A stretch of DNA of 64,000 bases, taken from NCBI RefSeq assembly GCF_036588685.1, contig NC_086374.1, forward strand, positions 71,238,001 through 71,302,000. Direction: 5' to 3'. Of the stretch, positions 5,376 through 55,911 are shown piece by piece. Numbering within the stretch: the stretch's first letter is position 1; every line of letters starts with the position of its first letter. The notes under the pieces were generated by a model. The model had not been told where the DNA came from. It made no database searches and was given only the letters and a program-made list of their open reading frames with translations. Both the position numbers and the translations under genes were made by a program. This stretch comes from Mytilus trossulus. Lineage: Eukaryota.

Positions 5376-5443
5376 TTTAAACTGCAAAAATAAATTATTG
5401 ATCCCAAAACATGATGAAGAGTAAAACTTATTAATTTTCAATA

Positions 5444-11448: not shown

Positions 11449-13314
11449 TTACGTAATATTATACAAAAAGGCTGTACCACGCGAGTTAGAAATTAGAAGA
11501 ATATTTCTTTCTTTGTCAAAATGGATACAATACGGCTTTTCAATTTTATGTTCTTCTCCTAACAGTTCACGGGCGTACTTTCCATCTGGTGAAATAACAA
11601 CGATACTGTTATTCCCACTAGAAGCCACATAAACATTGGAATCGTTATCAATAGTTACTCCACGAGTCTCCTTCAATACTGATTCGTCTTTGTATTCCCA
11701 AAACTTCTGCCCTGTGACTGTGTAGCATGTGACGGTACTTGAAGCCGAGTTTGTATGGTATATCTTGTCTTTTGATGTTGTCACATAGTTCCAATGATGA
11801 ATGGCTTCGACTTTAACTTCTGTAGTTCTAGTACTGTCATTGTGGGGACGATATCTTATAATATAACTCTGATAAAATACACAACAGCTTTGTAGTTTGA
11901 CGTTTACTAGTTACTAAGAATATAAGGAGACGTCGCCGTGTGACGTCGCCCTTAGATACAATGTGACTTCCGATACGTTGCCGGTCCCGCGGTCTTCTCG
12001 ACAGTCATCAGTGACGTCTGCTGTTAGAATACCACTTCCTAATTCATAATATATCAATCTTCCTTCTATATTTGTAATGCCGAAGCACGCATTGAACGTT
12101 TCAATTCTTTTAACACTCTTTCTATCGGCGATGTTGATGATTTCTATATGATCAGGCTTTGCATTATGGGTGACAGCGACGGTGTTTTCATTAATGCAAG
12201 TAACATCAACGGGACGTTGTGAAACCGGTATTTCATAGTCAAATAATCCGTTTTCTTTGTGGATAAGAAGACGACTATTGAAATTATCTACAAAAACTAT
12301 TTTCCAAGTAGGCATGATAGTGCAGCCTCTAATTCCATTTCCTCTCCTCTTTTCTGGTATCTCAATTTTCTTCAGTAAGGTAAGGTTGATGTCATTGATT
12401 GTTTTTGATATCGTCGGCAATGTATGTTGAGCTTGTTTGTCTCTATCCATCTTCAATGTAATGGTTGGTTGGGTTGTTATAACTGATATCTCTCCTATCT
12501 TTGTCATGGAGAGTATGTCCAACATCTTGTCATCCATTCTACATTTCAGGTTTATTTGTTGTAAGTTTCCATCTTTTAATAAAGACTGCATGAACATCTC
12601 TTCTTTATGGATCTGGGCCTCGAACATTTTACCTCCAAGAAATGATTGAAGGTCAGTTGCAAAAGTTTTCGTCGCGACAATATTTTTTTGTAGCTCATCT
12701 AATGATTTCTCATGGTCGGAAAATTTAGAAAGAAGTCTTTCTATTTGTGAGTGGACTTTCTGTTCCACTGCTTTGATATCCTGTAGAATTTCATTTTCAA
12801 GTATATCTAGGTGCTTGTTTATTTTATCACGTATCATTTGTATATCTGTGTGGAAAGTCTGTCGCTGTTGTTGAATTTTCCCCAAATTCTGTCTCCGGTC
12901 TTTTACTATTCTTCCTAGGTTTTTTTTCACATCTTGTAAACTTTGTTCCATGATGTCATATAATGCCGAGGTCTTCGACGTTTTAACAATATCATCAATC
13001 GCCATCAAATCACATGTTTTGTGGTTTGTTGTGATGCAAAGCGGACAACAGAGGTTTTCATGCTGGGAACAGAAGTACTGATATTTTTTGTCATGGTCTG
13101 AGCAGTATTGGTTTATACTTGCAATAGTGTGTGGTAGTTTTTGATAATTGTTCATTGAAATAACTTCATGATTTCTTGAGGCTTTGGAGGCACGATGGTG
13201 TTTTTCGCAAGATGAACATAACCCTTCGTCACATTCAGAACACCAAAAGTCGGCATCTCTCACCACGTGTTGGGTTTCACACACACCACAAAATGTTTCA
13301 CTAGCTGAAGCCAT
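11449..13314 (-). pseudogene. Second TRIM-like B-box/coiled-coil/NHL gene, interrupted by a solo LTR
   Basis: ORFs 11914-13314 and 11449-11784 are in the same frame. Removing 11841-12003 plus one GTCAT restores ...ADVTDDSTRTTEVKVEAIHHWNYVTTSKDK..., collinear with copy 1. A TTTTCAG acceptor sits 6 nt before the ATG, as in copy 1. Confidence 0.88.
11841..12003 (-). mobile_element. 163-bp solo LTR (TGT...ACA) with 5-bp TSD GTCAT
   Basis: TSD at 11836-11840 and 12004-12008; TG/CA termini. The minus strand has a GC-richer 5' half with CGGAAGT and GACGTCA motifs, then a TATA-like element and AGTAAA. Confidence 0.8.
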
Positions 13315-17659: not shown

Positions 17660-19742
17660 AATCCAACATTTCCGGTATGAATAGTTTTAATTCACTAGTA
17701 CTTTCATGTTTAAATAACAATCTTCAGGTGAAACTATACATGATAAACGTAACTATGTAACGGTAGGTATGTAACGTCATAGTTGTCGTTGAGTATAAAA
17801 AGGGAGATAAATCGTATTACACTTAGTCTATAAATAGAAGTATGGAACGTCATGATTACACAATAGAAAATGCACAGTTTGCATTCAATCGTGATTTAAA
17901 TTTTAAAATAAAATGTTTTTCCTTGACTTCTCGTGTAATGTCACAACCCATATTCATTTTATAAAATGGGAATATTTTAAAAAAATCCCCCGCCACATTC
18001 GTCTAAATGTTTGCTAAGAGGGATTTTTCTGTATTGTGGCTGCCGTATCTGTTGTCTATGAATGCGCACTCTTTCTGTTACACTGTTCCCTGTTTGACCG
18101 ATATAAATTTCCTGGCAACCATTACATTTAATGCAATAAATTAAATTCTTGGATTTACAGGTAATGTTTTCGTTGGTAAAGAGTGATAGACCATTGGGTA
18201 TGTCCATTCCCTTGCCGACATGGATATACGTACATGCTCCACAACGACTATCTCGAAATTTGACACACTGAATGTTCTTTTTTGGTCGAATCGTGCTCGG
18301 GTCAATAGTCATTTGAGGTTTTGTGGTTGCCGTTTACTTTGTAGAAGTGTTTCTGAATTAATTAAACGGTGCATCTTTTCATCCTGACCAAGAATAGCTA
18401 AATTTGCTTTTGCAACAGGAATAATTTTAAAGTTCCGGGGATTATGTGTAATAACGAACGGTATTTTATCGTTGTTGTTACTCTGCTCCTCGCGAGTGGA
18501 GCGTAGTTGGTTTATTGGGATCTGTTTTGCCATTTGAATTCCCCTTTCTATTAAAGTCTCTGGATAGTTTTGCTTGATCAAAAATGATTGTAGTTCCTCT
18601 AGACGGTCTTCTCTCAAATGTTCATCCTCGACTACTGTGCATATTTTTCTTGCTAAACAATAGGGGATATTCCTTTTGGTATGAGACGGGTGGCACGAAT
18701 TAAAATCTAAATACTGATGAGTATCAGTTTCTTTATAAAAAATATCAGTTTTAATTTCGGTGCCATCTTTAATAACAAGAATGTCTAGAAACGGCAATTG
18801 TTTGAAATTTTCACCCTTCGTGAATTTTATGGAGGTATGAAGGTTATTTAGTATGTCCGAAAATAGTTGGAGTTCTTCGTCGGATTTGGTCCAGATAATG
18901 AAGCAATCATCAAGGTATCTTTTCCATGATAATTCAAATTCTCCTGCAAATTCAACTCCAAAATTATTTTCAACTTCTTGATACAGTCTTTGTGTGAGAG
19001 AAAATCTATATCGTCTCTTATATAGCTCGGTACATATTTAAATAATGGTTTCAGAATTATGTCTAAAAAGTTGCTTAGTCTGTGAGTGGGACACGCTGGA
19101 CCTGCAATGATGGGTCTTAGTTTTAGATCCGTCGGGCTTTGCACTTTTATGTATTCATTTTTCTGAATATTAATGGCCGATTGGATCTCCTTTGATTTAT
19201 GGATTTTTGGAAGACCATAAAAGTTACTTGTTTTCCTTTCGAAATTTTTCAAGTAATCATACTCCTTTTTCGTTGTTGCCGTTGTGTATTTGTTCAGTAC
19301 GGTATTCATTCTTCTCTTGACTAGATGATCTATATTATCAGGAATTTCCGAGTAGAATGTCGAATCGTTGAGTTGTTCTTCCACTTTAATTCTATAGTAG
19401 TCTGAATCCATTATTACTATTGCCTCACCTTTATCGGCCTGCTTAATTACTATGCTTTTATCGTTTCTTAGATTATGGAGTGCTGATTTTTCGCCTTTAG
19501 TTAAGTTGTGGTTGCCTTTAATTTGTGTAAGTGGATAATTGGACAAGTTTTTCGATATAGTCATCTAAACACTTGTTTCTTCCGGTTTGTGGAATAAAGG
19601 TAGATTTGTTTCTTACTAACGAGTCGTCCTCCTCAGTTTCTTTATCAGCGTAATATTCAGTTAGTCTCAATCTTCGACAAAATTTCAACATGTCTGCTTT
19701 AAGTTCTTCATGATCCACAGAGGGAGTTGGCGTAAATTTTAA
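17660..19742 (-). mobile_element. Decayed Penelope-like retroelement (RT + C-terminal GIY-YIG endonuclease)
   Basis: KFTPTP, IVIKQADKG, FYGLPKIHK, LRPII, PFLDI, FYKETDTHQYLDFNSCHP, Cys linker RCGAC, GIY-YIG NLIYCIKC..C...YIGQT. Frameshifts and an internal deletion of the RT core near 18990. Confidence 0.92.
17691..17732 (-). ncRNA. Minimal type I hammerhead ribozyme in the Penelope 3' repeat
   Basis: Minus strand: UUCAC CUGAAGA U-UGUU-auuua-AACA-U GAAA GUAC UA GUGAA. Perfect 5-bp stem I, palindromic stem III AGUACU, same strand as the element. Confidence 0.75.
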
Positions 19743-21042: not shown

Positions 21043-22668
21043 TTAAATGTTATACAAAAAGGCTGTTCCACGATAGTTACTAACAAGTAGAATGTTTCTT
21101 CTTTGATCACAATGGATACCATAAGGACAATTAATTCCAATTTCTCCCCCAAATAATGTCCTTTCCATCTGGTGAAAGTATGGCGACATTGTCATTCCCG
21201 TAGGATACCACATACACATTGAAATGGTTATCAATTGTTACCCCACGAGTCCCTTTTAACATTGATTAGTCTTTGTATAATTCCCAAATCTTCTGTCATG
21301 TAACTGTGTAGCAGTTGACGGTACCTGTATTTAGGTCTGTACGGTATATCTTGTCTTTTGATGTTGTGACATAGTTCGAACTTTGCTTTCATCCAATTTC
21401 AACCACTGTTGTGACACTACTTTCATTAGTGACGTCTATTGATTGAATACCACTTCCCCATTCATAATATATTAATCTACCATTCATATTTGTAATGCCA
21501 TAGCAAAGATTGGACATTTTAATCTTTTTAACAATCTTTTTTATTTTTGATGTTGATAATTTCTATACGATAAGGAAATGCATTACGAGTGACAGCGACG
21601 GTGTTTTCATCAATGCATGTAACATCTACAGGATGTCGTGATACAGGTATTTCACAATCAAGTAATCCTCTTTCATTGTGGATTACAAGACGATGGTTGT
21701 TATTATCTACAAAAACTATTTTTCTAGATGGGATGATAGTGCAACCTGTGATTTTAGGCTCCATTTTTCCTTTCGGAATCTCAATTTTTTTCAATAAAGT
21801 AGGATTGATGTCATTGATTGTTTTTGGTATCTTCGGTACTACTTTTTGAGCTTGTTTGTCTCTTGTCATCGTCATGGTAATGGTTGGTGTGTTTGTTATA
21901 TCTGGTATCTCTTCAATCTTTATTTTAGAGAGTAAATCAGACACATTATCATCAATTCTGCAAAGTACGTTTATTTGTTGTAAACTTCCATCTTATATTA
22001 AAGAATGCATGAACATCTCTTCCTTTTGGATCTCGGTCTCAAATATTTTTCCGCCGAACAATGTCTGAAAGTCTGTGGCAAAATGTTTAGTCGCAGATAT
22101 ATTCTTCTGTAGCTTATCTATTGTTTTACCATGGTTGGAAATTTGTGAAAGCAGTCTGTCTATTTGTGATTTGGCTTTTTGTTCTGCATCTTGGATATTC
22201 TGTTTTATTTCCTGTTCAAGTTTATCTAGATGTTTGTTTATCTTGTCCCGTATATCTAATATATCTGTTTGGAATCTGTGTCGCTGTTGTTGAGTTATCT
22301 CTAAATTATATCTCCGATCTTCTACTATTCTTCCAATGTTGCTCTTCATATCTTTTAAACTTTGTTCCATAATGTCAAATAATGCAGAAGTCTTTGACGT
22401 TTTGACTATTTCATCAATAGCCATCAAATCACATGTTTTGTGATTTGAAGCAATACAAATCTGACAACAAAGTTGTGCATGATGGGAACAGTATTGTTGA
22501 TACCTTTGCTCATGGTCTGAGCAGTATAGCTTTAAACTTGCTATTGTCGGTGGTATTTGTTTATAGTTATCGATCGAAGTAACTTCATGATTCCTTGTGC
22601 CCCTTGAAGATTGGTGGTGCTTTTCACATGATGAGCATAATCCTTCATCGCATTCAGGACACCAGATG
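21043..22668 (-). pseudogene. Third TRIM-like B-box/coiled-coil/NHL copy, pseudogene
   Basis: ORF pieces 21993-22685, 21528-21944 and 21043-21234 are collinear with copy 1. In-frame stop at 21993, several frameshifts, and the first half of B-box1 and the start are missing. Confidence 0.88.
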
Positions 22669-24231
22669 TACTTAGAATTTGCCAAATTGTAAATCTTTTT
22701 TGTCAGATTTGTTTTTATCTTGTATCAATGATCACTTGACTGTTAAAAACTATACAAAGCTATTAAGGTTTCGAGACAAGTACCAAAACTGTAAAATAAA
22801 TGAAAAAAAAATTCATTTAAGGACAATTTTTAAGTTTTTTCAGTCTCACAATTAGGCCATGTGACTGACGTTGACAATCTTTTGAAATTAGACACACAAA
22901 GAACACAATTGAATATAATTTGGTGAGTCCATTTCAGCGACGGATTTTGAAAGCGTTGATTCTAGAAAAAGAATCCACGGTAAATGAATAGGTTGACGTC
23001 ACCACAATGGTTTAAATTTTTGTATACCTTAATATAATTCATTTAATAACTTTAAGTCTGCAAACAATTTTCAAATAGATTTATTTTACCTATCTCCTTA
23101 TTTGTTTATGATATATAATGTATGTCATAGTGTTCCATAGCAAATCATAACAATGATTTGAAAAGTACTTTATTTGGTACCGTACTATACGCTGCGATTC
23201 ATGAATAAACTATAGCATTAATTTTGAAGAAATGTGAAAAATATACATGATTTACCTCAACCTGTTTACAGTGTATATAAAGTGCGAATCCAGCTAGTTC
23301 ATTTTTACTGTTATATGCGGGTATTCTATTGTAGAATAAAGGATCATGGGAAAATAATATTTGTTTACGTTTTGAAAATATCAAGTTAAAGGATTTTAAG
23401 TTAAGTTTTAACATATTTTCATTGTGATATGTCTTTATAATATACAAACATAGCATTAAAGTTCAAATAAGTGTTATAAAAGCATCATAATATAGCATAT
23501 TGATTATTGAAAGCGATCCATTTTAACTATAGATGCGATGAATTATCACTGTTAGAGCAGTCATTATTAATGTAGAATTTTCAAAGATGCGAGGAATTTT
23601 TATTGTAGAATTATGTGATAAATGCACTTGCAACAAATGAAAAAAAAACTTAGTTGATGACTTTAGGATTTATGATACATGTATTTTCAAATTGAAATAC
23701 AAACTCCTCATTCATTCTTCATCAAATATATAACTTTTTAAACTTGTAACAAAAGCGATTCTCAAAATGTCATATTGTATTCTTCAGAATACGTTTCTCC
23801 TTGATTTTAACTTATATAGGGAATCACTGAAGCGTGACAGCAGCGGGCCCTCTTAGGCAGTCAGTGGGCCCCTACTTATGAAAAATTCTAGATCCGCAAA
23901 TGGATACTACCGCAGAGGTAAAACCATGCACATTTGGGTTATTGTACACAAAATGCATGCTACAATTCATTTTTGTTGATTTAGACCCTTTGGAATTCTA
24001 TGTGGGCTATTTCAGCAACTAGGCAAAAAATCCCAAAACTAGATACAAGGTTGGATTCAGCATGTCAACGAATTCCAAATATCTATATTAAAGGACTTTT
24101 GTCTATAAATTTGGACCCCACAAAATTGAAAAAGGGACCAAAAATATAAAAAAAAATGCATGCATCGGATACATTTGTTATTGAAATCATGACTGTAACA
24201 ATAGGATGAATATACCAAAATATCTTATTCT

Positions 24232-37264: not shown

Positions 37265-39384
37265 GACGTTACGCACGATACTGGTGTCACTTCTTACTTT
37301 GACGTGTATTAACATTTCGATGGCGAATATGTACTTCAGTTAGTAAAACAAAACTGTATCATTATATACCAAAATATTCCGTTTTAATTGTATTTTATCA
37401 TTATTAAATTAGATAGTCGTTTTATAAAATGTGTGTTTGTCAATCCGATTGTTTAAACCAAAATTGTTATGAAAATAACTTGTAAGATGTAACAAAATTT
37501 TACCGTAATCACTCTAGTAATCTCTTTAAAATATTGCAAACATTGCATAAATTCCGCCAAATTTCACTCAGTAACGTCATAACTAACAAATTAATTGTGA
37601 CGTCTTTTTTGGCGAAAAAGTCATGTCAATAGGCAAAATGGTGGCGGAAAAAAATAATGGTAAGCATTGTAATCATTTGATTTTAACGTCACTAGATTTG
37701 CATATAAAAGTTTCTTCTCTAAATAATTGCAATATTTTAAATGACTTACACTATATAAAAATATAGAAAGACGGCTCATAAACTATACTTCAACGTATAA
37801 AAGTTTGCTCAAAATCGTGTTTGTTTTGAAAACCAAACAAGCCATATTTCTCAGTCTTACAAAATGTCCCCTTATTCTACATTCAACGTTTCCTTACACA
37901 TTTTCTCAGATTGTGTCATCTCAGTTCAGAATGCGAAGCTTTCACACTTTGTACTTTATGCTTATCAGATTGCTCATGGATTAAGCTTTAAAATGGTACC
38001 CATTGTATTGGTATAGCCGTTTAGTTAATTAATAATATTTCTAACTTTCTGAGACTTACAAAATGTCCCCTACGTCTTTTTTCGTATTTGAACGTAAATT
38101 TATCTTTTTTTAACGCCACCTTTCTTATGCGTCAATTCGACGTATTTAATTTGCGATGTGTTTTAAATTAAAGATATTTTTGCAACTGTAGGTTCCATCA
38201 TGAAATCAAAAGGTAAAATTGACAAAATGAAAATGTATAGAGAAAGGAAAAAAGATAAAAAAAAGTGAGAGAAATAAATTATACTACGAAATGAAACAAA
38301 ATGAGAGAATAAAAGAATACAAAAATTCCATAGCTGCTGTAAAAAAGAGAAGACAAAGGGAAAAACACAACTCACTTAAGCAAAAAGCTGAAGCTAGGAG
38401 ATTAAAAAACTTGCATAATGTCAGAAGGTTTAGGGAAAAAAGAAAAGGTGAAGAAAATCTTGAAATTGTAGAAATTGAAGATGTAAAGAATTTTACAAAT
38501 AGAATGAAAAAATCCAGAGCAATAAAAAACTTAAGAGAGCACTTCCTCAGACTCCTAGAAAAAAAGGCTGAGCTTTTGATAAACCTTTTGACGGGGAAAA
38601 AATCTAAGCAGTCACCTACAATGGCAAAATTAAGGCAAATGAACATTGTTAAATCCCCTGACGAAATTGAAAATGATGAAATAGCAAAGCATGTCTTAGT
38701 TGATGTTAAAAAAGTCCTGACTCATACAAAAGCTCAAAGATCAAAAGACGATTTCGAGGTAGTTGATATTTTTCCGAAAAGGAAGTTTAGTTGCATTATA
38801 TACAGACGATGAAGGAGAAGACTTTTATCTAATGAAGGCAGGATCATGTCAAGAAAAACTGCAAAGTTCGGAAACTGACGATTGGCAGGGTCAGTACCCA
38901 GAAGGAACTACCGTTATTCGTGGATTATATTATAGAAAAAAATGACCTTTATCGTACAGTTTAATTCAACGTAAAAATGTAATTGTGAGTGTCAAATCTG
39001 TCTTATATGTAACAAATGATATTTTGACGGACTCCGTAATCGATTTGTCCTTGGCCATTCACGAAGAAATTATTGGACTGGCAGAGCAAAGCAGTTTATA
39101 ACAGACTATTCGGAATAAAATTGAACGAGTTATTTTGTCTTTGAATTGCTTTTATATTTTGTATATTTCTTAAAAAGTAAACAAACAAACATTAAAAAAA
39201 GACAAACTAAAGAAACAATTAACGTAAACTGAAAGGGAAACAAACAAAACAAACATACAATCGAATTAAAAAAACATCAAATTTAGTCTTTCAATGCCGT
39301 CGTTTTTCAACGTTTCATTTTTCCATGTAGAAAACGTCGTAATTCGACGTTACGTTTGGTGAAACCAGTATCGTGCGTAACGTC
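37265..39384 (+). mobile_element. Internally deleted TIR DNA transposon (superfamily unassigned) with coding remnants
   Basis: 26-bp TIRs GACGTTACGCACGATACTGGTKTCAC (25/26). Basic/coiled ORF remnant at 38200-38812 and a second remnant at 38763-39100; no DDE core visible. Confidence 0.75.
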
Positions 39385-39420: not shown

Positions 39421-42400
39421 TATGGAACGCCATAGCTGTCTTATGTGTCTTTTTTTATTGCTTTTCTATTATAAGATGATGCTTTTCTATTATAAGATGG
39501 TGCTTTTCTATTATAAGATGGTGCTTTTCTATTATAAGATGGTGGTTTTCTATTATAAGATGGTGCTTTTCTATTATAAGGTGGTTTTCTATTATAAGAT
39601 GCTTTTCTATTATAAGGTGCTTTTTTATTATAAGGTGGTTTTCTATTATAAGGTGCTTTTCTATTATAAGGTGCTTTTTTATTATAAGGTGGTTTTCTAT
39701 TATAAGGTGCTTTTCTATTATAAGGTGCTTTTCTATTATAAGGTGCTTTTTTATTATAAGATGCTTTTCTATTATAAGGTGCTTTTCTATTATAAGGTGC
39801 TTTTTTATTATGTGATGGTGGTTCCCGTGATTAACCGGGAGTGTGGGGAAGCACTAATGACAGGACGATTGCCCGGATATTGAGAGGACGGTTGACCGGA
39901 CGAGATATAAATAGTCATAACTTTTTTGTTATTCTGTAGATTGGTTTAATATTTGTAGACCTTAAAGATATTAAAATATATTTTATGAAAATCAAAGAAA
40001 ATAAGTGAAAAAAATATTTTTGAGCAACTAAAGTTGACCGGACGGTATTCACACTCGTCGTTATACACTGTACATATATTCAACTTGTTCAATTCAATTT
40101 AAAATATTTTATTGTTCAAATATCAAATGTACATTTAAACAAAGGGATTGGACAAAAGGCAGTGCCTATACAAATCCTTTCCCATACAAGATGGATTGAA
40201 TAACATGCATGATAGTATATAATTTTCTGGTAAGTTAATAGATCATACGTTGTTGCAGTGAGTCAGGGAGGCAGTTCCTCCACTTCTTGAAGTATTTTTT
40301 GTGTATACATTATATACAAATAACTATGTTAACAAAGTTAAAGCAAGACCTACTGAAGGTGATGTCGAATTTTATACCAAAATAATAAGTGTTGGTTAGG
40401 AATCAAGTAGATCATAAAGTGATTTTTACTCAAATTCACAAGCTCACTGCAACAAAGTTGTTCTATTTATATGAATAAAAAGAATTCATTGGCCCTTTTT
40501 TGCAATACATAAATAATTTAGTGTACCATCTTATTACATGACTATTAATTTCTTGATTTTTGATAATATAATTACTAATACAAAAAATAAAATAAAATAT
40601 ATATAAATTTATTTGCAAAAAGATGCTAAACACAATTGGTTGTTTTTTGTGTTAAAAGTTAGGTTTGTCTTTAATTAAGACTAAAGAGTGGTACACTGTG
40701 GTTATAGGCTGGTTTCTAAACAGTATATATCACATGAATTATTATAAAATCTTCCAGTTTCATGAATATATTGTTGTACATATGTAAATATCTCTGTGTT
40801 TTCGTCAATATTTAAGTCTGAGCAACCCTGTAGAAGGACATCAAGATTGACATTTTCAAAGTTACTTATTTTTTGAAAGAGCTCATATCTCTGATAAATG
40901 TAAAAATGGACAAACATAAAAGAAATGAATATTATCTTCTACTGGATCTCCACATGCACACATAGAGCTGTCCGACAAATGATCACAGAAGAGATGATCT
41001 TTTAGATCACTAGCCTCATTTCTTAATTGGCAGTGGATTATATTAACTTTACGTGAACCAGTGGAAAAGAAAACAGGACAAGGACTTATGTCCTCATTTA
41101 GTTTTCTTTTAAATCCTGTGAAGCTTAAAATATTTTTAACTTCTCCATCAAGGGAATTCCACTTTTCAAGAGTATGTGGAATAAAACTGTTTTTATAGGC
41201 TGTGGTTCGACACTGAGGAGTTTTAAATTCCTTTTTTTTTTCTCAGACCATACTGGTCATTAGTGTTTGTATATGACAAGATATCAGCAGCAATATAATT
41301 AGGAATATCTCCAGAAATAGTTTTATGAAGAAACAATAATTTGTTTTTCTGACGTCAACAAGTGTTAATATCTTTGACAATATTTGTCCAAGTAATTCAG
41401 GAATCTGTGAGATTTAAAAACAAATTATACGAAAATATAAACTTATAGTAGAAAAAAATATTTTTCTGCTAAAAAGGTTGACCGGACTAAATTCACATTC
41501 GCCGATGTGTTTAACAGAGACATATATGATACATGAAGAGATTCGCACATCTATAATTGTATTTTAGGTCTTTGGCTTTAAATATATTAACAGGATTTTC
41601 TTTCTTCACAGAAGGTTGACTGTCAGTAAGAAGTATCTGATGATCTTGACTGCCATTATCAGCATACCTCAATCTTAGTAGATTTCGGTGTTTATACAAC
41701 CTTTCTGTTTTGACTGAGGTATTTTTAACTTGGCTGGTATTTTCAACTTGGCTGATGTTTTGTTGTTTTTGGAGACTGAGATTCTAAGGGAAAGGACATT
41801 CAAATAATGTGCCTCCTAAGAGTCCGAGAAGCTCTCGGGATGCACGATTTTGCGTATTTTTTCAAGGTTTCTGGGGGTCTTGAGCGACCGCCAGACCCCT
41901 CACCGAATGATGAATATATTTTGCCTCACTTTTAAATTTAAATATAGTGACAGACTAGTTAGTGACAGTGCAGTATTATACAAGAGTAACTTTGTGTTCG
42001 ATGCCCGTCCTTTATTTTCTATTGTAAAGTGTCTGAACACGACTGAATGCAAGTTTACTCCTTCGATGTTAAAGGTCATATTGGAATACATTGTTGTTGT
42101 TTTTCAAATGATTTGATACCGGCAGATTGGTGGTCTCACTTTAATTTAATCCATGTCAGCTATCTAGTTTTATCTTTAAAAAGAGAGAGAGCCAGTTTTG
42201 TTTTCTTTAATAAAAAGTTCAATTCACTGTAATCTTTGTTTGGATTCTGATTGCCATCTGATTATATAAGTTAATTCAATTAAATGTATTTGATGTCTCA
42301 GATGTGAAAACTTAAATGACATGATTATTTGCTTGATTGGTGATTACGACTGGTGTCAAAATTAGATAGTAATCTAATTAAATACATGTAATAAATATTT

Positions 42401-43057
42401 TATATATCAGCTCAAAGTTTTTATTAATTTATTTTATTTTATTTATTTATTAACGAAATGCACATTTATACCCCTGGGGGTTAATAAAAAAACCACCTTA
42501 TAATAAAAAAGCACCTTATAATAGAAAAGCACCTTATAATAGAAAAGCACCTTATAATAGAAAACCACCTAATAATAAAAAAGCACCTTATAATAGAAAA
42601 GCACCTTATAATAGAAAACCACCTTATAATAAAAAAGCACCTCATAATAGAAAAGCACCTTATAATAGAAAACCACCTTATAATAGAAAACCACCTTATA
42701 ATAAAAAAGCACCTTATAATAGAAAACCACCTTATAATAGAAAACCACCATCTTATAATAGAAAAGCACCATCTTATAATAGAAAAGCACCATCTTATAA
42801 TAGAAAACCATCATCTTATAATAGAAAACCACCATCTTATAATAGAAAAGCACCTTCTTATAATAGAAAAGCACCATCTTATAATAGAAAACCACCATCT
42901 TATAATAGAAAACCACCATCTTATAATAGAAAACCACCATCTTATAATAGAAAACCACCATCTTATAATAGAAAAGCACCATCTTATTATAGAAAAGCAT
43001 CATCTTATAATAGAAAAGCAATAAAAAAGACACATAAGACAGCTATGGCGTTCCATA
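39421..43057. mobile_element. Foldback-type non-autonomous DNA transposon (TATGG termini, 6-bp TSD; IS3EU-like)
   Basis: TATGGAACGCCATAGCTGTCTTATGTGTC / reverse complement ending at 43057; TSD TATACA at 39415-39420 and 43058-43063; arms built of 18/21-bp units GTGSTTTTCTATTATAAG(ATG). Confidence 0.85.
40088..41390 (-). mobile_element. 5'-truncated CR1/L2-type LINE nested in the foldback element
   Basis: ORF2 C-terminal remnant (PHTLEKWNSL; HCQLRNEASDLKDHLF..CACG...ED..HFF..C; YIHETGRF) followed by a 3' UTR with AATAAA and a (TTGAA)n tail. Confidence 0.75.
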
Positions 43058-45425: not shown

Positions 45426-48079
45426 TCAATTGAAATGGCGGGAGTCAATTGAAATGGCGGGATTATTTTCTGTTAAAGTTTTGACAATTTCAGTGTGTCG
45501 TCCTTTCCAAGCCATTTGCCATGGAAGCATACCATCATTATCCGGAATATCAGGATCCGCCTTATACTCTAAAAGTATGTGAACTATTTCTAAGTGTCCT
45601 TCTCTTGAAGCTACGTATAATGCTGAACGGCCATTATTGTCACGTTTGTTAGCGTCAGCGTTTTTGTCAAGTAAAAATTTAACGATATCTGTGTGTCCCG
45701 CTTTGCATGCTAAAAGTAATGGCGTCTGGCCAGATTTATCTTCTTGTGAAATTCTGAAGTCATGTTTCAGCAAAAGCATCACAGGAGCAATATGACCTGT
45801 ATAACAAGCTATATGCAATGCTGAGTAACCTTTGACGTCATGTAAAACATCAGCGTTTCTTTTTCTCTTAAGCAAAATATCGACCACCTCTGCATGTCCC
45901 CATGCACAAGCTGTATACAAAGGAGATCTTCCAATGGGGTCGCACTGTGTAATGTCGGCATTATTGTCGAGAAGCATTCTAACCACCGACGCATGTCCAC
46001 CTTCACATGCAGTATATAACGGAGAGCGTCCACTTCTATCACATTTTGAAATAGAAGCTTTTTGTTGCAACAACAGCTTTACAACGTTCGTATGGCCCCC
46101 TTCACATGCAAGATGTAAGGGAGCACGCAGATTATGTTCACACTGATGAATGTCGAAGTTTTTTGAAAGAAGCTGTTTGACAACACTTGTATGTCCCTGT
46201 TGACATGCAATATGCAAAGGCGAAAATCCATTGGTTGAACACTTATATACATCGAATGATGACTCGAGTAATGTTTTCACTATTTCTGAATGACCGGCTT
46301 TGCAAGCAACAAAGAATGGAGATCGACCAGCATTATCGCAAAGAAATCCATCATCTTTTCTTGTGAGTAGTAGCTTCAGTATCCTTAAGTGACCCTCTTG
46401 GCACACAATATACAATGGCGTTCGACTAGACATATCACACTTTGAAGAGTTAACATTTTGAGTCAATAAAGTTTTTACTATTTCGTAATGTCCGCCTTCA
46501 CATGCTGCAAATAAAGCGGAATGTCCCATACAAGTACTTAGAGACGTGTCTGCACCTCTTTCGATGAGCAGTTTTGCAACTGGGGAATAGCCTAACATGG
46601 CCGCCACGTGTAAAGCTGATCGCCCAAATTTGTCACAAAGGTTAATGTCACATTGAAAATCTAGAAGCATTTCTACGATGTTTACGTGTCCTTCAAATAC
46701 AGATTCAATTAATGGTAATCGAATACTCCTATAATCATTTTCCTTGTAATTTCGTGCTGATAGTTCTTGTCCTTGCTCTTCAATTTGTCTGAGGAGTTTT
46801 TCAACATCACTTTGTCTGGTTTTGAAATAAGCTATGAATTTTGAGCGATAAATATTATAATGTAGTTGTTGATTATGAAAAGCACTGTATGTTATGCCCC
46901 TCTTTAAATCTTCTATCAGTCTATCGAAATATGTTTCTTCTTCGTCGGAAGAGATAAATATAACATTTTCATCAGACGTAACTGCTTTGCCGTTTTGATC
47001 TTCGATTGTGTCTTCGTCAGACGAGTAATCTTCTAGATCGTCGAATGTATCTTCTTTTATCGACTCAAAGCGAAATCGGTCACCAATAAATGTACTGTCT
47101 GCGTGAGTAATGAAGCATTCTGATAAATGTTGTCCGCAGACAACAGCACCAATATCATATATTTTGTCATGTATCATTCGGTAAGAGTTGTCGGACTTTT
47201 TTATGTAAGTTTTCAAAAGCGAATCCAGGTGTTCTTTAAATTCTTTCCTATTAGATTGAGTCCTTAGATCTACAATGCACTCTCTGCAAATGTCTGAAAT
47301 AACTAAACTAACTTCTTGTGAACTTGACCTTGGTTTTAACCACTCAAATTTAAACCGGTTATTGAATATGATAACCATCACAATGGCACAATATTGAAGC
47401 TTATTAAATTGTTGTATGACTTTAAGGTCTTCCCGAATACCATCAATTGGTTTTGTAAAAAACATTCTTGCATCTACAGTTGGCCTTCTATGGTAAAGTT
47501 TACAAAGCAAAGGGAAAAAATCGTACGTTTCAATTAAGTCTTTGATGTAATTGACAGTACTTTTTGGGAAGTACTTGTCTGCGATTAAAATTCTTTCTTT
47601 CTGAAGAACTGAAAAATCGGTGGACAATAAATTGCATTCATTATTGAACAGTTGCTTAAGTCTTCGAAATTGAGGGTCGTTGTAAATTTGTAAACGGCAG
47701 GAAGCTAACAGTTTTATAGTTCCTTTGGCTAAGATTTTTTCTATTTGGCCTAGATGTGTGTACCACCAATCAACCGTCTGCACATTTACGGTAACTTTTC
47801 CACAAATGTCATCTATAACAAAAACCTGGTGCTTTCTCGGGTCACTGTATCGAATAATGTCTGACAGATCTACCACAAAGGGTATTATTTCATATTTTCT
47901 TTGTTTGTGCATTTGAAGTGCTACGTGATGAATAAGTGCAGATTTGCCATTGCCTGAACTTCCGGTTACGACGATACAGTTGACTGATTCTACAAGCTGT
48001 TGCACGTGATTCGTAGCTCTGGTGACACAATAACGCTCCTCTTCTAGTTCCCAATCTGTGATACATTCTTTAAAGTGTT
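45426..48079 (-). CDS. Last exon of a CARD-CARD-STAND-ankyrin gene: nSTAND3-type P-loop NTPase + helical region + 13 ankyrin repeats
   Basis: Walker A VVTGSSGNGKS, Walker B VFVIDDICG, KLLASCR strand, FPLLCKL motif; 33-aa repeats G.(S/T)PL..AC..GH..IV..LL. Acceptor TTATTTTAG ends at 48080 (phase 1); the ORF-track N-terminus is intron. Confidence 0.92.
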
Positions 48080-48589
48080 CTAAAATAAGAATTAACTGAT
48101 TATTGAATTTTAAAGAAGCAAAACGTGACAGTTTCTGCAATATGAAAAATTGTAAATTGTTCTTACATGTCTTCTTCATAAGACGGAAGCCTGAGTTTTA
48201 AATAATATGATATTTGATACAAAATATAGCCCGTGCACTGTCTACATATATTAGTTCAAAGAAGGATGTACCTCACAAGGAAGTGATTATTAATTGAAAA
48301 ACTGAAATAAATTCAAGTTTTAAAATAGCAAAAAAACTACTCCTTCTTATCGTAGTGGAAAACAATAAGTAGGGGCTAGATGGGGTTTCCTGTGAATAGA
48401 GATAAATGTAAAGAAAGGAGAGAATAAGAGTCAAAAATAAACCTCGTTTGAATCCATATTAAAGCGAGTTCAGTTGCACTTTGAGCTGAAGTCAGGTTGG
48501 GACTGTTCAGTTATTGAAAAGAAAAGAATACCAACATTGAAAGATAAATAATATGAGAGCCAACAAATTCAACCCAATATCGAGTTTAC

Positions 48590-48709
48590 CTCTCATGCTT
48601 GAAAGAATTGGATCTCGCATGGTTTCCACCTCTGACCTCAATCTTTGGTTTTCGGACGACAATGTTTCAACTTGCTTCGACAGTTTTACCATTTGTTGTT
48701 CTGTTTTAT
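48590..48709 (-). CDS. Coiled-coil linker exon (120 bp) of the CARD-CARD-STAND-ankyrin gene
   Basis: TTGTTTTCAG|...AG|GTAAAC, phase 1-1; DKTEQQMVKLSKQVETLSSENQRLRSEVETMRDPILSSMR. Confidence 0.8.
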
Positions 48710-48744
48710 CTGAAAACAAATTAACATATTTATCAAATATATTC

Positions 48745-48935
48745 AATAAAATTGAAAATGAAATAGGGGAATGGGTCACAGAAACAACAACCCGACCATA
48801 AACAGACAACAGAAGAAGGTCACCAACAGGTCTTCAATGCAACGAAAAATTCCCGCACCGGGAGGCGTCCTTCAGCTAGCCCCTAAACATATATATATAT
48901 TAGTTCAGTGATAATGAACGCCATACTAAGCTCCA
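48745..48935 (+). repeat. Intronic interspersed repeat
   Basis: ATAAAATTGAAAATGAAATAGGGGAATGGGTCACAGAAACAACAACCCGACC head, recognised as a common mussel repeat; single copy in this window. Confidence 0.5.
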
Positions 48936-49243
48936 ATATACTTTGAATTATATAAAGTTATAAAAAATACTGACACAAATTTGATAACCCGTTTTTACGC
49001 AAGGATTCCCGAAAATTCAGTTTTGAACCTATAACGGCATATAAAAAAACGCAAAAAACACAGGTTACATATAATTAGCTGATAAATATTCGTTGATGTG
49101 AAAACCAATCAGATAATGAGGCAAAACTATCTTAAAAAATGGAAATATGGAGATGAGGTATGATGCCAATACGACAACTATCCACAAGAGTTCAAATTAC
49201 ACGGATGTAAGCAAGTATAGACCTTCAACAATGTCTTCCTTAC

Positions 49244-49576
49244 CTGAAAACTGTTCAGCAAGTCGTTTTCGTTCTTCCCTGGTGACAACAGTTGTTTCAA
49301 TGTCTTCAGCAATGCTGAGACATTTATCTCCTAGTCTTAATGTGTCTACGAACTGTTGATAGGCCATTTCATCCTTCAACATTAGTATGTCAACTAGTTT
49401 TCGGTTTTGTTCGGTTAATGTTGCTTCAGACCGGATGTCGTCATAATCTGTGAAACTGAGTACGTCTTTTGCCAGCAGAAAATCAAACATGCAATGGAAC
49501 TTCACACTGGCAATCTTTTTATAATTCTTTTGAAGCCTGACCTTATATTCTGGTACCAGATTTTCAAAGTTTGACT
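49244..49576 (-). CDS. Second CARD (death-fold) exon, 333 bp
   Basis: TCTTTACAG|...CAG|GTAAGG, phase 1-1; RLQKNYKKI...MFDFLLAKDVLSFTDYDDIRSEATLTEQNRKLVDILMLKDEMAYQQFVDTL fits the CARD pattern. Confidence 0.85.
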
Positions 49577-50294
49577 CTGTAAAGATATAAGTTCTTAAAA
49601 TTAGTCGTTTTCTTTCAATAAGAAAGCATAACACGATATAAACAAACCAAATAACTAGAAGTGTACACAACACAAGTTTGTAATATAACTGTCATCAGAT
49701 ACGATTGGGACTATAAAACGTGTATATTGTCAAATAAGTTCATCAAAATAAACAAAAGACAAAAAAATCTTAGCAGAACAAGCAAAATCTTATATATTAA
49801 TGGTTGAAATATTATTATTGAAATATGATAGTTGTTTCTAGCTCAAAGGTTAAGTTTTAAAACGTATTAAAATAAGTATGTTCTTTTCCATAACCGACAC
49901 AAGACCACCACATCAGCCCGAGATGTTAGTCGAGTGATGATATGTGTCCAGGGATGATACCCGGGCCGATGTTCAAATGGACGTATGGAATGATATTAAT
50001 CTTTTTATCATAATTTACTGCCCATATGATATACTACTAGGCTGTTAGCCCGATCACGTGACGGCACATAAGGGTTAATATGGATAATCAGCCTGGTGTG
50101 AATTTATGGCTACTTTACTTCCGCTTATCACAAATACGCAAAAACTATCATAGTAATGCTAATTATATGATAAGGTTAGATTATAATCTTCATTTTTGGG
50201 GTTCGAACTTTTCTATTCTTGAAAACTTTCCAAGAGCAAAAATAAGAGTACTATATACTGTGTAAAAGATTACTTTATATCAATAAATTCTAAC

Positions 50295-50633
50295 CTTCTG
50301 GTAAATTCATAGGTGAACTATCAAATTCATCATACGCCATAGCATGTCGGTCAATTTGTTCTAGGAGGTTGCTATAGTGGCTGTTTTCTCTTAGTAAATC
50401 TACGAATACTTCGCATGCTATGTCACCTCGGCTAAGTATCACTTCTAAGAACATTCTGTTCTTCCTGGCTAGAGTAGGCTGAGCATCAATAAAGGCTCTG
50501 TCGTCGACGGTCAAGGCACAGTACGACACCATGTCGTCTAATATGTCGGCCAGATGGAGAGAATTAATTATTGTCTCAGACATTTCCTTTATCCGGGTCT
50601 TATAGTCTATCAAATGACCATCTGCCGTTGCCA
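50295..50633 (-). CDS. First CARD (death-fold) exon, 339 bp; start codon not located
   Basis: CATTCCAG|...AAG|GTTAGA, phase 1-1 (an alternative in-frame acceptor lies 12 nt inside); IINSLHLADILDDMVSYCALTVDDRAFIDAQPTLARKNRMFLEVILSRGDIACEVFVDLLRE. Confidence 0.8.
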
Positions 50634-54880: not shown

Positions 54881-55911
54881 CAGGGGCGGATCCAGGATTT
54901 CCAGTTAGGGGGGCGCAAAGTTTTATTTTCGCCGAGCGGAGCGAGGCGAAAAATTTTTGGAGTTTCATTTTAGGTAAAATAATTGAAATATTCTTCTAAA
55001 GGGGTGAAATGTAGATATCTCGAACTATTGTGTGGTAAAAATAGCGAGAAATTAAAGTTTCAAGCTGAAACCGCCTTAATCCACACCTGACAACAATCTA
55101 CAAATAATCGGGCGGACAGACGGACGCAAAGCGAGACGAGACAGAACACAATTGCTCACCTGACCAATATATTTTTCAAACGAAAATTTCTACTTTTACC
55201 AGCGATTTTTAATTGTCCTTTCATACTATCGGTTTTTTTTTACTTTTTTTTATTTTCGGAGGTCGTGCCAGACTTCACTGTGTTCGCCACAAACAACTAA
55301 AATCAGAATGAGATGCATTTACCCAGTTATATTCATTTTCTTGCAAGTTGGGATCCCAAGAATACAGTAATACGATACAGAATTCGGCTAAATATGTAGG
55401 TTGCAAGTGAGAAATAAATAATAAAGACAAAGAGAAACAAATTAATAAACTAACCTTTAGCTAGGAACAGTATTTCTATCTTTCATTACGGATATTATAA
55501 AAGAATCTCACTGTTTTCTTGACCGTGTGACTGTCATGATGAAATTGTGAAAGTGAGTAAGGGATGTTTTGGAACTTCGATTATCTAACAAATTGATTAT
55601 AAAAACCGCATATACAATGTAACATTTGTTTTTACTTTAACTGCTAAAAACCTATTATATTTGTCATCAAACGCAGCTCCGCGTTTGAAACCTTCCTTTG
55701 AAATTATCTTTAGAACTTTAATAAAGCGTAGGTCAGTTGATTAGTAATCACGTTGATTCTGTTAAACTGACTGTTATATATCATACTTTGAATGTTAAAA
55801 AAGATTGAATGGTCTATTCTGATACTTAAATATGTTGAAGACAACCCATGCTTTGCAAATTTTAGGGGGGGGGGCGCACGCCCGCCACGCCCCCGCCTAA
55901 ATCCGCCCCTG
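54881..55911. mobile_element. Non-autonomous TIR element CAGGGGCGGAT...ATCCGCCCCTG with 5-bp TSD
   Basis: GGAGT on both flanks. Confidence 0.75.

What the first reader, a model, noticed from the sequence alone, without database searches (positions are those of the whole stretch)
45426..50633. Hidden NLR-analogous receptor: CARD-CARD-coiled coil-nSTAND3 NTPase-13 ankyrins
Seen: four separate ORF-track entries join through GT-AG introns into one open frame of about 1148 codons (exons 50633-50295, 49576-49244, 48709-48590, 48079-45426), with intact Walker A and B motifs. Known: STAND NTPases follow an effector-NTPase-sensor layout; tandem N-terminal CARDs occur in NOD2 and RIG-I-like receptors; nSTAND-family NTPases are used by prokaryotic antiviral STAND systems. 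As I recall, bivalve nSTAND3-ankyrin proteins usually carry a DZIP3-like HEPN domain at the N-terminus. Inference: this is a non-NACHT, non-LRR inflammasome/apoptosome-like sensor in which ankyrins bind ligand, the NTPase oligomerises and the 2xCARD nucleates a caspase or a MAVS/ASC-like adaptor. I cannot confirm that the architecture is undescribed.
Basis: partly seen in the sequence, partly recalled or inferred. Interest (0 to 1): 0.88.

Follow-up and report, generated by a model that had tools for sequence, protein, structure and literature searches.

The report
Mussel tandem-CARD STAND ankyrin receptor gene
This is a real, conserved mussel (Mytilus) gene whose protein joins two caspase-recruitment domains and a short zipper to a bacterial-type molecular switch (nSTAND3 ATPase) and 13 ankyrin repeats; it is already in public databases as "uncharacterized", belongs to a mussel-specific family, and is a candidate death or immune signalling platform in animals that lack Apaf-1.

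Summary
All four exons, their GT-AG borders and the three phase-1 introns are as stated. With one extra A, they translate exactly to RefSeq XP_063424146.1 (Mytilus trossulus LOC134707914, 1148 aa).

Per-exon Pfam gives CARD, CARD, a leucine-zipper-like coiled coil, then nSTAND3 plus 13 ankyrin repeats.

Two corrections:
- The gene is not hidden. It is annotated in five Mytilus species.
- Its ATG is split (A|TG), so at least one further 5' exon exists.

Intronless full-length contigs (3.7 and 3.9 kb) carry the same junction residues, which supports the splicing in relatives.

The NTPase folds as a STAND NBD-HD-WHD module. Walker A/B, the sensor-1 arginine and an MHD-like IHD motif are conserved. 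It scores below the curated cut-off for NACHT and does not hit NB-ARC.

The gene is single-copy and 92-99% conserved within Mytilus. At least 28 protein clusters (90% identity) among those listed, all from Mytilus, share CARD+nSTAND3. They sit inside a much larger nSTAND3-ankyrin expansion that mostly carries HEPN N-termini, and trees show that N-termini were swapped.

Function is inferred only: ligand-gated oligomerisation that clusters CARDs. I found no paper describing the architecture.

Verdict: a new variant of a known kind, of moderate interest. The same scan also noted this stretch's phase 1-1 exons (s1-823950).

The parts
50295..50633 (-). First coding exon (not the first exon of the gene). 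It holds TG of the split ATG, then residues 2-113. CARD1 is at about residues 11-95 (window 50604-50350).
   Evidence: AG acceptor and GT donor. Pfam CARD 6.6e-11. The model shows seven helices with a split helix 1, pLDDT 82-89.
49577..50294 (-). Intron 1, 718 nt, phase 1, GTtaga...ttacAG
49244..49576 (-). Exon with CARD2 (residues 114-224; CARD at about 123-208, window 49550-49293). It opens with the YKVRLQKNY motif, which is shared with second-CARD exons elsewhere in the genome. 333 nt, symmetric phase 1-1.
   Evidence: Pfam CARD 7e-12. Motif found in 39 of 54 fetched CARD loci. Model pLDDT 84-89.
48710..49243 (-). Intron 2, 534 nt, phase 1, GTaagg...tttcAG
48590..48709 (-). Exon encoding a four-heptad leucine zipper (residues 225-264). 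Core positions are L234, V238, L241, N245, L248, V252 and M255. 120 nt, symmetric phase 1-1.
   Evidence: Sub-threshold bZIP_1/HALZ coiled-coil hits. Part of one long helix 213-255 in the model. Core positions are kept in the 65%-identical relative P0270 while surface positions change.
48080..48589 (-). Intron 3, 510 nt, phase 1, GTaaac...ttttAG
47058..48079 (-). STAND NTPase module of the nSTAND3 family (residues 265-605): nucleotide-binding domain, helical domain and winged helix. Motifs: Walker A 47963-47940, Walker B 47825-47808, sensor-1 SCR 47702-47694, FFPLL (GLPL-like) 47519-47505, IHD (MHD-like) 47174-47166.
   Evidence: Pfam nSTAND3 3.5e-22. Motifs invariant or nearly so in 84- and 62-sequence alignments. 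AF2 model pLDDT 89.5. Best multi-domain structural matches: NRC2, a STAND-TPR protein, MalT, Dark, NLRP3, NOD2.
46938..47057 (-). Acidic, serine-rich loop, predicted disordered (residues 606-645)
   Evidence: pLDDT below 50 at 612-633. Only 27.5% identical to P0270.
46725..46937 (-). Helical connector between the NTPase module and the repeats (residues 646-716)
   Evidence: Helices 642-708 in the model. R651 invariant, D655 and N667 nearly invariant in the family.
45426..46724 (-). 13 ankyrin repeats (residues 717-1140), a short tail and the stop codon (45428-45426); the presumed sensor
   Evidence: Ank_2 1.7e-156. 13 repeats by sequence register and 13 helix pairs.
55512..55512 (-). Candidate only: last base (A) of an unlocated 5' exon. 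This is the only A|GTGAGA-type strong donor within 5.4 kb upstream.
   Evidence: Pattern scan. No transcript evidence, so it may be wrong.

Best explanation
The locus is the M. trossulus gene LOC134707914.

What is shown:
- It is an intact gene that is spliced in close relatives.
- It is single-copy and conserved across the genus Mytilus.
- It encodes, in order: tandem CARDs, a short leucine zipper, an nSTAND3-clade STAND NTPase with the NBD-HD-WHD layout and all nucleotide-switch motifs, an acidic loop, and 13 ankyrin repeats.
- It is one lineage of a Mytilus family of CARD-nSTAND3-ankyrin proteins. That family is nested in a far larger nSTAND3-ankyrin expansion whose N-terminal effector modules (mostly HEPN RNase-like) have been exchanged on phase 1-1 exons.

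What is inferred, from how STAND proteins such as Apaf-1, NLRC4 and Avs work:
- At rest the ankyrin array and the winged-helix histidine (IHD) hold the NTPase in a closed, ADP-bound state.
- Binding of a ligand to the repeats permits nucleotide exchange and oligomerisation.
- Oligomerisation brings the 2xCARD modules together.
- The clustered CARDs recruit and activate CARD-bearing partners by homotypic contacts. Candidates are the caspase-2-like CARD caspases of bivalves, or members of the very large Death-CARD-CARD exon family in this genome.
- The outcome would be cell death or immune signalling.

The ligand is unknown. I think an intracellular non-self or danger signal is the most likely.
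For: Gene model and identity.

Splicing:
- P0106 is 1148 aa on a contig of only 3706 nt, and P0270 is 1136 aa on 3893 nt. The genomic coding span is 5208 nt. Both carry the same junction residues and begin MA.

Domains:
- Pfam per exon.
- Full-length model with pLDDT 83.4, two CARD bundles, one long helix and 13 repeats.

Switch motifs: conserved across 84 and 62 relatives.

STAND fold:
- VIA-align 2: NRC2 Z 13.6 over 266 residues, MalT 12.1 over 313, Dark 12.0 over 278, NLRP3 11.5 over 292, Avs5 filament 11.4 over 182, NOD2 11.0 over 309.
- Foldseek: NOD2, NLRP3 and NLRC4 at E about 1e-5.

Conservation:
- Within Mytilus: CARDs 94-99% identical, NTPase 96-99%, ankyrins 92-96%.
- Against the 65%-identical relative P0270: NTPase core 83.5%, CARDs 68-69%, ankyrins 60%.

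Copy number: single copy in this genome.

Family:
- 28 of the 120 listed clusters carry PF00619+PF20720, all from Mytilus.
- 46 long proteins have two or more CARDs.

Possible partners:
- At least 150 CARD exons lie over the Pfam cut-off, including Death-CARD-CARD triplets.
- Bivalve CARD caspases are caspase-2-like (PMC7836458).

Precedent: Avs5 (Sir2-nSTAND3-TPR) is activated by the phage protein JADA, and its Sir2 effector then hydrolyses NAD+.
Against: - There is no functional data of any kind.
- The CARD partner is unidentified, and I could not examine CARD-caspase loci.
- The gene is single-copy and not in a tandem array.
- Its ankyrin surface positions are no more variable than framework positions: 52% against 62% identity versus P0270 (p = 0.12), and 92% against 92% within Mytilus. 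That is not the usual signature of a pathogen-driven receptor.
- The nearest solved CARDs match only weakly (E 5e-4 and worse).
- The zipper helix has only moderate confidence as a monomer (pLDDT 56-66).
Confidence: 0.58

Rival explanations
1. It is an endogenous cell-death platform rather than a pathogen sensor. On this reading the conserved single-copy protein is a functional stand-in for Apaf-1 in mussels. It would respond to an internal signal (mitochondrial, metabolic or damage-related) and activate caspase-2-like CARD caspases on an apoptosome-like oligomer.
For: - APAF-1 was not found in molluscs, annelids or brachiopods, while CARD caspases persist (PMC11463336; PMC7836458).
- In this genome the 13 NB-ARC hits lie in long ORFs. 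The four I fetched all have coiled-coil, not CARD, N-termini.
- The gene is a 1:1 ortholog in five Mytilus species, with 92-99% identity in every folded domain.
- There is no excess change on the ankyrin binding surface.
- The nearest solved natural CARDs are of the CED-3, RAIDD, Apaf-1 and NOD1 kind.
Against: - CARD-nSTAND3 proteins were found only in Mytilus, plus one unnamed relative. The protein therefore cannot explain caspase activation in molluscs in general.
- It is nested in a family whose other members look like immune effectors (HEPN).
- No WD40 or other cytochrome-c-binding module is present.
- CRADD is already proposed as the mollusc activator.
Confidence: 0.24
2. It is a signalling scaffold or regulator that does not itself trigger death. 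Two examples: a platform feeding an NF-kB-like pathway through the Death-CARD-CARD adaptors, as NOD1/2 do through RIPK2; or a CARD decoy that restrains such pathways.
For: - Second-CARD exons of the large Death-CARD-CARD family are 37-42% identical to CARD2 and share its YKVRLQKNY leader.
- RIPK2 and NOD1 CARDs are among the weak PDB matches.
- Related family members add SAM and SH2 signalling modules.
Against: No evidence for any particular partner or pathway. An intact NTPase switch argues against a passive decoy.
Confidence: 0.13
3. It is a gene-model artefact or a decaying pseudogene: separate CARD and NTPase genes wrongly joined.
For: Some database entries for the same locus are fragments or differently extended models (P0100 304 aa, P0103 757 aa, P0101 1178 aa).
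Against: - The reading frame is open over 1148 codons, with canonical splice sites.
- Two intronless full-length contigs cover all the junctions.
- Collinear orthologs of 1140-1157 aa exist in five species.
- All catalytic motifs are intact.
Confidence: 0.02

Closest known systems
Apaf-1 / CED-4 / Dark (apoptosome ATPases)
   Same: N-terminal CARD, a STAND ATPase with NBD-HD-WHD, a conserved histidine in the winged helix, and a C-terminal repeat sensor. Dark is a structural match at Z 12.0 over 278 residues. The nearest solved CARDs include CED-3 and Apaf-1.
   Different: - Two CARDs plus a zipper rather than one CARD.
- The NTPase is nSTAND3 by profile, with no NB-ARC hit.
- Ankyrin repeats rather than WD40.
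- No sequence-level orthology.
Vertebrate CARD-bearing NLRs (NOD1, NOD2 with 2xCARD, NLRC4)
   Same: An effector-NTPase-repeat layout with CARD effectors; NOD2 also has tandem CARDs. NOD2, NLRC4 and NLRP3 are among the best Foldseek matches.
   Different: The NACHT profile is below its cut-off (16.1 against 26.7 bits). There are no LRRs. TM-scores are only 0.33-0.38.
Bacterial Avs5 (Sir2-nSTAND3-TPR antiviral STAND)
   Same: Avs5 carries the same Pfam NTPase family, PF20720 (paper). The Avs5 filament structure 9nc9 matches the NBD at Z 11.4 over 182 residues. The NTPase core also hits a PADLOC defence-candidate family, PDC-S73, at 8.7e-13.
   Different: The effector is a Sir2 NADase, not CARDs. 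The sensor is TPR/Sel1/PPR, not ankyrin. It is prokaryotic. I did not test direct sequence similarity to Avs5.
Mytilus HEPN_DZIP3-nSTAND3-ankyrin paralogues
   Same: The NTPase module is 35-43% identical and the repeat type is the same. The closest paralogues of this gene are of this kind.
   Different: The N-terminus is a predicted HEPN RNase instead of 2xCARD plus zipper. Many of them sit in tandem arrays, whereas this gene is a singleton.
Other Mytilus CARD-nSTAND3-ankyrin proteins (e.g. LOC134690009, LOC134718119)
   Same: Same domain order, with tandem CARDs as the norm.
   Different: Only 26-35% identical. Their NTPase modules form a separate group in the trees, so this lineage acquired or kept its CARDs independently. 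Some add SAM_NCD1 or SH2 domains.
RIG-I-like receptors (2xCARD-helicase)
   Same: Tandem N-terminal CARDs.
   Different: No helicase. The CARD_2 profile (PF16739, which in my own recollection is the RIG-I/MAVS-type CARD model) gives no hit on this gene's exons. The nearest solved CARDs are of the caspase/Apaf-1/NOD1 kind.

Membership tests
STAND NTPase superfamily | P-loop NTPase with Walker A and Walker B | tested here: met
   GSSGNGKS and VFVIDD are present. G, G, K and DD are invariant in an 84-sequence alignment.
STAND NTPase superfamily | NBD followed by a helical domain and a winged helix, with a conserved sensor-1 arginine and a winged-helix histidine | tested here: met
   SCR (R393) and IHD (H568) are conserved. 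The model has pLDDT 89.5. Multi-domain matches to NRC2, MalT, Dark, NLRP3 and NOD2 have Z 11-13.6 over 266-313 residues. I inferred the position of the histidine in the winged helix from secondary structure; I did not measure it.
STAND NTPase superfamily | Nucleotide-dependent oligomerisation | not testable with these tools
   Needs biochemistry or cryo-EM.
nSTAND3 (Pfam PF20720) | Score over the curated gathering threshold | tested here: met
   79.2 bits against 27.2, covering profile positions 1-150 of 155.
CARD (Pfam PF00619) | Profile match over threshold, and a six-helix death fold with an interrupted helix 1 | tested here: met
   42.5 and 45.6 bits against 23.9. Both domains are modelled as helical bundles with helix 1 split in two, pLDDT 82-89.
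NLR (NACHT-LRR) family | NACHT NTPase domain | tested here: not met
   PF05729: E 0.01, 16.1 bits against a cut-off of 26.7.
NLR (NACHT-LRR) family | C-terminal leucine-rich repeats | tested here: not met
   Only ankyrin families hit the C-terminus.
Apaf-1 family | NB-ARC domain | tested here: not met
   No PF00931 hit at E<=1. The fold is nonetheless similar to NB-ARC proteins.
Apaf-1 family | WD40 sensor that binds cytochrome c | tested here: not met
   No WD40 hit; the sensor is ankyrin repeats.
Avs5 (AVAST type 5) | Sir2 effector fused to nSTAND3 and a helical-repeat sensor | tested here: not met
   The NTPase family is shared, but there is no Sir2 and no TPR. PADLOC gave PDC-S73 as its only NTPase-family match and no AVAST model.
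Ankyrin repeat proteins | Tandem 33-residue helix-turn-helix repeats | tested here: met
   Ank_2 1.7e-156. 13 repeats in register. 13 helix pairs.

The most novel reading that the evidence does not exclude
This orthogroup is the missing apoptosome-like activator of CARD caspases in mussels. On this reading it is a death platform assembled by exon shuffling from an Avs5-type (nSTAND3) NTPase, ankyrin repeats and a tandem-CARD cassette, and it functionally replaces Apaf-1, which molluscs have lost. Its activity could be relayed or diversified through the hundreds of Death-CARD-CARD exons in the genome.
Probability: 0.13. Interest if true: 0.8.

Novelty: new variant of a known kind. Interest (0 to 1): 0.48.

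Why it matters
Molluscs keep CARD caspases but have no detectable Apaf-1. A recent survey names CRADD as their only CARD-containing activator (PMC11463336). That survey defined activators by CARD+NB-ARC or CARD+Death, so proteins built on nSTAND3 would have been missed.

Mussels turn out to have a whole family of CARD-nSTAND3-ankyrin proteins. This member is conserved and single-copy, which makes it a tractable candidate to test.

The locus also gives a clean example of how animal STAND receptors are rebuilt:
- Each effector module sits on its own phase 1-1 exon.
- The NTPase trees show that CARD and HEPN N-termini changed places several times.
- The NTPase belongs to the same Pfam family as that of a bacterial antiphage system.

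If the protein oligomerises and activates a caspase or an adaptor, that would add a third NTPase clade, beside NACHT and NB-ARC, to the death-fold signalling platforms of animals.

Tried and rejected
The samples and species behind the Logan contigs (P0106, P0270, P0002, P0003) remain unknown.
I could not inspect the regions upstream of the caspase exons for CARD prodomains.

Searches that gave nothing useful:
- Comparing coordinates of the top 150 CARD exons and the 91 caspase exons showed no co-location. This is uninformative, because only the best-scoring CARD exons are listed.
- A search with residues 1-290 of P0001 among long proteins found only the protein itself.
- The ESM Atlas gave no usable hit.
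- A sequence search of the PDB with the NTPase module found only designed ankyrins for its last repeat.
- The literature search on 'nSTAND' with partial-word matching was swamped by 'nonstandard'.

Tests without a result:
- Complex prediction on two copies of the zipper (residues 209-266) returned no answer: score 0.08 against a mark of 0.32. It counts neither for nor against dimerisation.
- The test for excess change on the ankyrin binding surface showed no signal.

Handling of the spliced model:
- All searches of the model were made exon by exon, by reference.
- Full-length analyses used the public protein P0001, which a search returned.
- The only joining was an in-script equality check of the window's exons against P0001. 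It printed no sequence.

Full report
**What is there**

The window is AT-rich animal DNA (30-37% GC) from Mytilus trossulus. Exon 4 of the finding is 100% identical to RefSeq XP_063424146.1, 'uncharacterized protein LOC134707914' (P0001, 1148 aa).

I read the minus strand base by base and checked it by script. The four stated exons are bounded by AG acceptors and GT donors. The introns are 718, 534 and 510 nt and all are phase 1. The two internal exons (333 and 120 nt) are symmetric 1-1.

With one extra leading A, the exons translate to exactly P0001. That was an in-script equality check only. All database searches of the model were made exon by exon, by reference, or with the public protein id P0001. 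I sent no joined sequence to any search tool.

**Two corrections to the observation**

- Position 50633 follows an AG acceptor. The genome reads cag|TGGCA, yet the public protein and two transcript-like contigs start MA... The start codon is therefore split A|TG, and at least one 5' exon lies upstream. The only strong A|GTGAGA donor within 5.4 kb upstream ends at 55512. That is a guess, not a finding.
- The gene is not hidden. Models of 1140-1157 aa exist for M. trossulus, M. edulis, M. galloprovincialis, M. californianus and M. coruscus. UniProt names some of them 'CARD domain-containing protein'.

**Is it spliced and expressed?**

Indirect evidence is good.
- P0106 (1148 aa, 97% identical) comes from a contig of 3706 nt.
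- P0270 (1136 aa, 65% identical, collinear from Met1 to the end) comes from a contig of 3893 nt.
- The genomic coding span is 5208 nt.
- Both proteins carry the junction residues ...NLPE|ES......FS|DK......MR|EH... or their equivalents.
- No intronless copy exists in this genome. The CARD exons match only their own locus at 100%, and the next-best matches are 35% and 42% identical.
- Other cluster members (P0104, P0105, P0107, P0108) read into the introns, as genomic contigs would.

**Domains**

- Pfam per exon: CARD (6.6e-11), CARD (7e-12), sub-threshold bZIP/coiled-coil hits, then nSTAND3 (3.5e-22, 79 bits against a cut-off of 27) and ankyrin families.
- NACHT scores below its cut-off, and NB-ARC gives no hit at E<=1.
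- A full-length AlphaFold2 model built on 62 relatives has pLDDT 83.4 and pTM 0.62. It shows:
  - two helical bundles (residues 11-95 and 123-208), each with helix 1 broken in two as in CARDs;
  - a disordered linker (97-115);
  - one long helix (213-255);
  - the NTPase module;
  - a disordered acidic loop (612-633);
  - a helical connector;
  - 13 ankyrin helix pairs. This matches the 13 repeats counted in sequence register.
- Exon 3 has four heptads with the core L234, V238, L241, N245, L248, V252, M255. All are kept in the 65% relative while surface residues change. Such a core, with a buried asparagine, is typical of dimeric zippers (my own knowledge). The dimer prediction gave no answer.

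**The NTPase**

- In an 84-sequence alignment the following are invariant or nearly so: Walker A G-x-GK, Walker B DD, the sensor-1 arginine (SCR), a FFPLL motif in the position of GLPL, and an IHD motif in the position of the MHD/LHD histidine.
- The module alone models at pLDDT 89.5 and pTM 0.84.
- Foldseek ranks NOD2, NLRP3, NLRC4, ORC/Cdc6, NRC4 and MalT first, at E about 1e-5 and TM 0.25-0.38.
- The wide structural scan gives as its longest matches: NRC2 (Z 13.6, 266 residues), a STAND-TPR protein 6mfv (12.6, 299), MalT (12.1, 313), Dark (12.0, 278), NLRP3 (11.5, 292) and NOD2 (11.0, 309). The Avs5 filament matches at 11.4 over the NBD.
- Plain AAA+ domains score similarly on the NBD alone. 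The fold therefore places the module in STAND but not in a particular clade.
- By sequence no solved relative exists.
- The core hits a PADLOC defence-candidate family, PDC-S73, at 8.7e-13.
- PF20720 is the NTPase of Avs5. Avs5 is activated by a phage protein and then fires a Sir2 effector.

**Family context**

- A HMMER scan of 1.84 billion cluster representatives finds 1020 relatives of the module at E<=1e-3 and 221 at E<=1e-30.
- In this genome the first look for nSTAND3 gave 595 candidates. Only 21 were scored, and all were over the cut-off.
- A profile of CARD-bearing members retrieved 120 listed clusters. Of these, 28 carry PF00619+PF20720, all from Mytilus and at least five from M. trossulus. 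The oyster (Saccostrea) hits carry HEPN instead.
- Tandem CARDs are the rule: 46 long proteins have two or more. Variants add SAM_NCD1 or SH2 domains.
- In trees of the NTPase module, this orthogroup (with P0270) sits in a well-supported clade together with HEPN-type and other paralogues. It lies apart from the main CARD-bearing group. Supported branches force at least 2 label changes in the IQ-TREE quick tree of 93 rows, and at least 4 in the FastTree tree of 117 rows. These are quick trees, and 12 rows with partial NTPase matches were left out of the first.
- Together with the phase 1-1 exons, this shows that N-terminal modules were swapped.

**The CARD world of this genome**

- At least 150 CARD exons pass the Pfam cut-off, out of 330 candidates. 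They form arrays on contigs C5 (72-85 Mb), C9, C8, C13 and C19.
- In three of the four places I sampled, the unit is Death exon, CARD exon, CARD exon (L051, L053, L054). Pfam confirmed the Death exon in L051 and L053 and the two CARD exons in L051. No NTPase ORF lies within the remaining 5-7 kb of each fetched stretch downstream of the second CARD exon.
- Their second CARD is 37-42% identical to CARD2 and shares its YKVRLQKNY leader. The 2xCARD cassette is therefore homologous as a unit.
- These proteins are plausible homotypic partners, but this is untested.
- The nearest solved natural CARDs are CED-3, CARD8, RAIDD, NOD1, Apaf-1 and RIPK2, all weak matches.

**Selection pattern**

- Within Mytilus the CARDs are 94-99% identical, the NTPase 96-99%, the ankyrins 92-96% and the zipper 80-93%.
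- Against P0270 the NTPase core is 83.5% identical, the winged-helix region 77%, the CARDs 68-69%, the ankyrins 60%, the zipper 46% and the acidic loop 27.5%.
- Substitutions are not concentrated at canonical ankyrin binding positions.
- The gene is a singleton. Its neighbours in the window are TRIM-like genes and repeats, not paralogues.
- This profile fits a conserved signalling hub at least as well as an arms-race receptor.

**Mechanism and rivals**

- I commit to a ligand-gated STAND switch that signals by induced proximity of its CARDs (0.58). The sensed signal is most likely intracellular non-self or danger.
- The main rival (0.24) is an endogenous, Apaf-1-like death platform. Published surveys find no Apaf-1 in molluscs and only caspase-2-like CARD caspases in bivalves. 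The NB-ARC genes I sampled in this genome have coiled-coil N-termini.
- A non-death scaffold or regulator (0.13) and an artefact (0.02) complete the list.

**Novelty**

- The general kind is described: death-fold effector, STAND NTPase and repeat sensor, in lineage-specific expansions of sessile marine invertebrates (PMC8195603; PMC9646362 for bivalve NACHT/HEPN expansions).
- In the held library I found no paper on CARD-nSTAND3-ankyrin proteins or on nSTAND3 in molluscs.
- The sequences are public but only machine-named.
- I rate it a new variant of a known kind, of moderate interest.

Noticed in passing
window 3669-5441, 11449-13314, 21528-22685 (minus strand): Tandem array of three TRIM-like genes with B-box and coiled-coil regions; the C-terminal regions gave no Pfam hit. 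The first is one intact 590-aa ORF. The other two are split into two ORFs each, so they may be interrupted or decaying.
   Followed up: partly
window 17977-19564 (minus strand): Three consecutive ORFs that look like a retroelement. The last has a GIY-YIG nuclease hit (7.9e-5), as in Penelope-like elements.
   Followed up: partly
window 39422-39883 (+) and 42569-43033 (-): Two blocks of tandem repeats in inverted orientation, which translate to long runs of (V/M)(V/L)FYYK. A lysine- and glutamate-rich ORF lies nearby at 38291-38812. Possibly the ends of a mobile element.
   Followed up: no
L051 661-4001; L053 1013-4843; L054 753-3097 (own genome, contigs C5 and C11): Repeated gene units of Death exon, CARD exon, CARD exon, belonging to arrays with well over a hundred CARD exons (C5 72-85 Mb, C9 75-77 Mb, C8 54-57 Mb, C13, C19). 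Their full gene structure and function are unknown.
   Followed up: partly
L055-L058 (own genome, contigs C10 and C17): NB-ARC matches lie in very long ORFs (889-1457 aa for most) with coiled-coil N-termini. None of the four I fetched looks like Apaf-1.
   Followed up: partly
P0082, P0181 (M. edulis, M. galloprovincialis): Relatives with the layout SAM_NCD1 - 2xCARD - nSTAND3 - ankyrin; P0082 also has a C-terminal SH2 domain. This is an unusual mix of death-fold and phosphotyrosine signalling modules.
   Followed up: partly
P0315 (M. coruscus, 1562 aa): A single model lists HEPN_DZIP3, CARD and nSTAND3 together. It is either a true double-effector protein or two neighbouring genes fused by the predictor.
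   Followed up: no
window 55512 (minus strand): The only strong A|GTGAGA donor within 5.4 kb upstream of the split start codon. It is a candidate end of the missing 5' exon.
   Followed up: no
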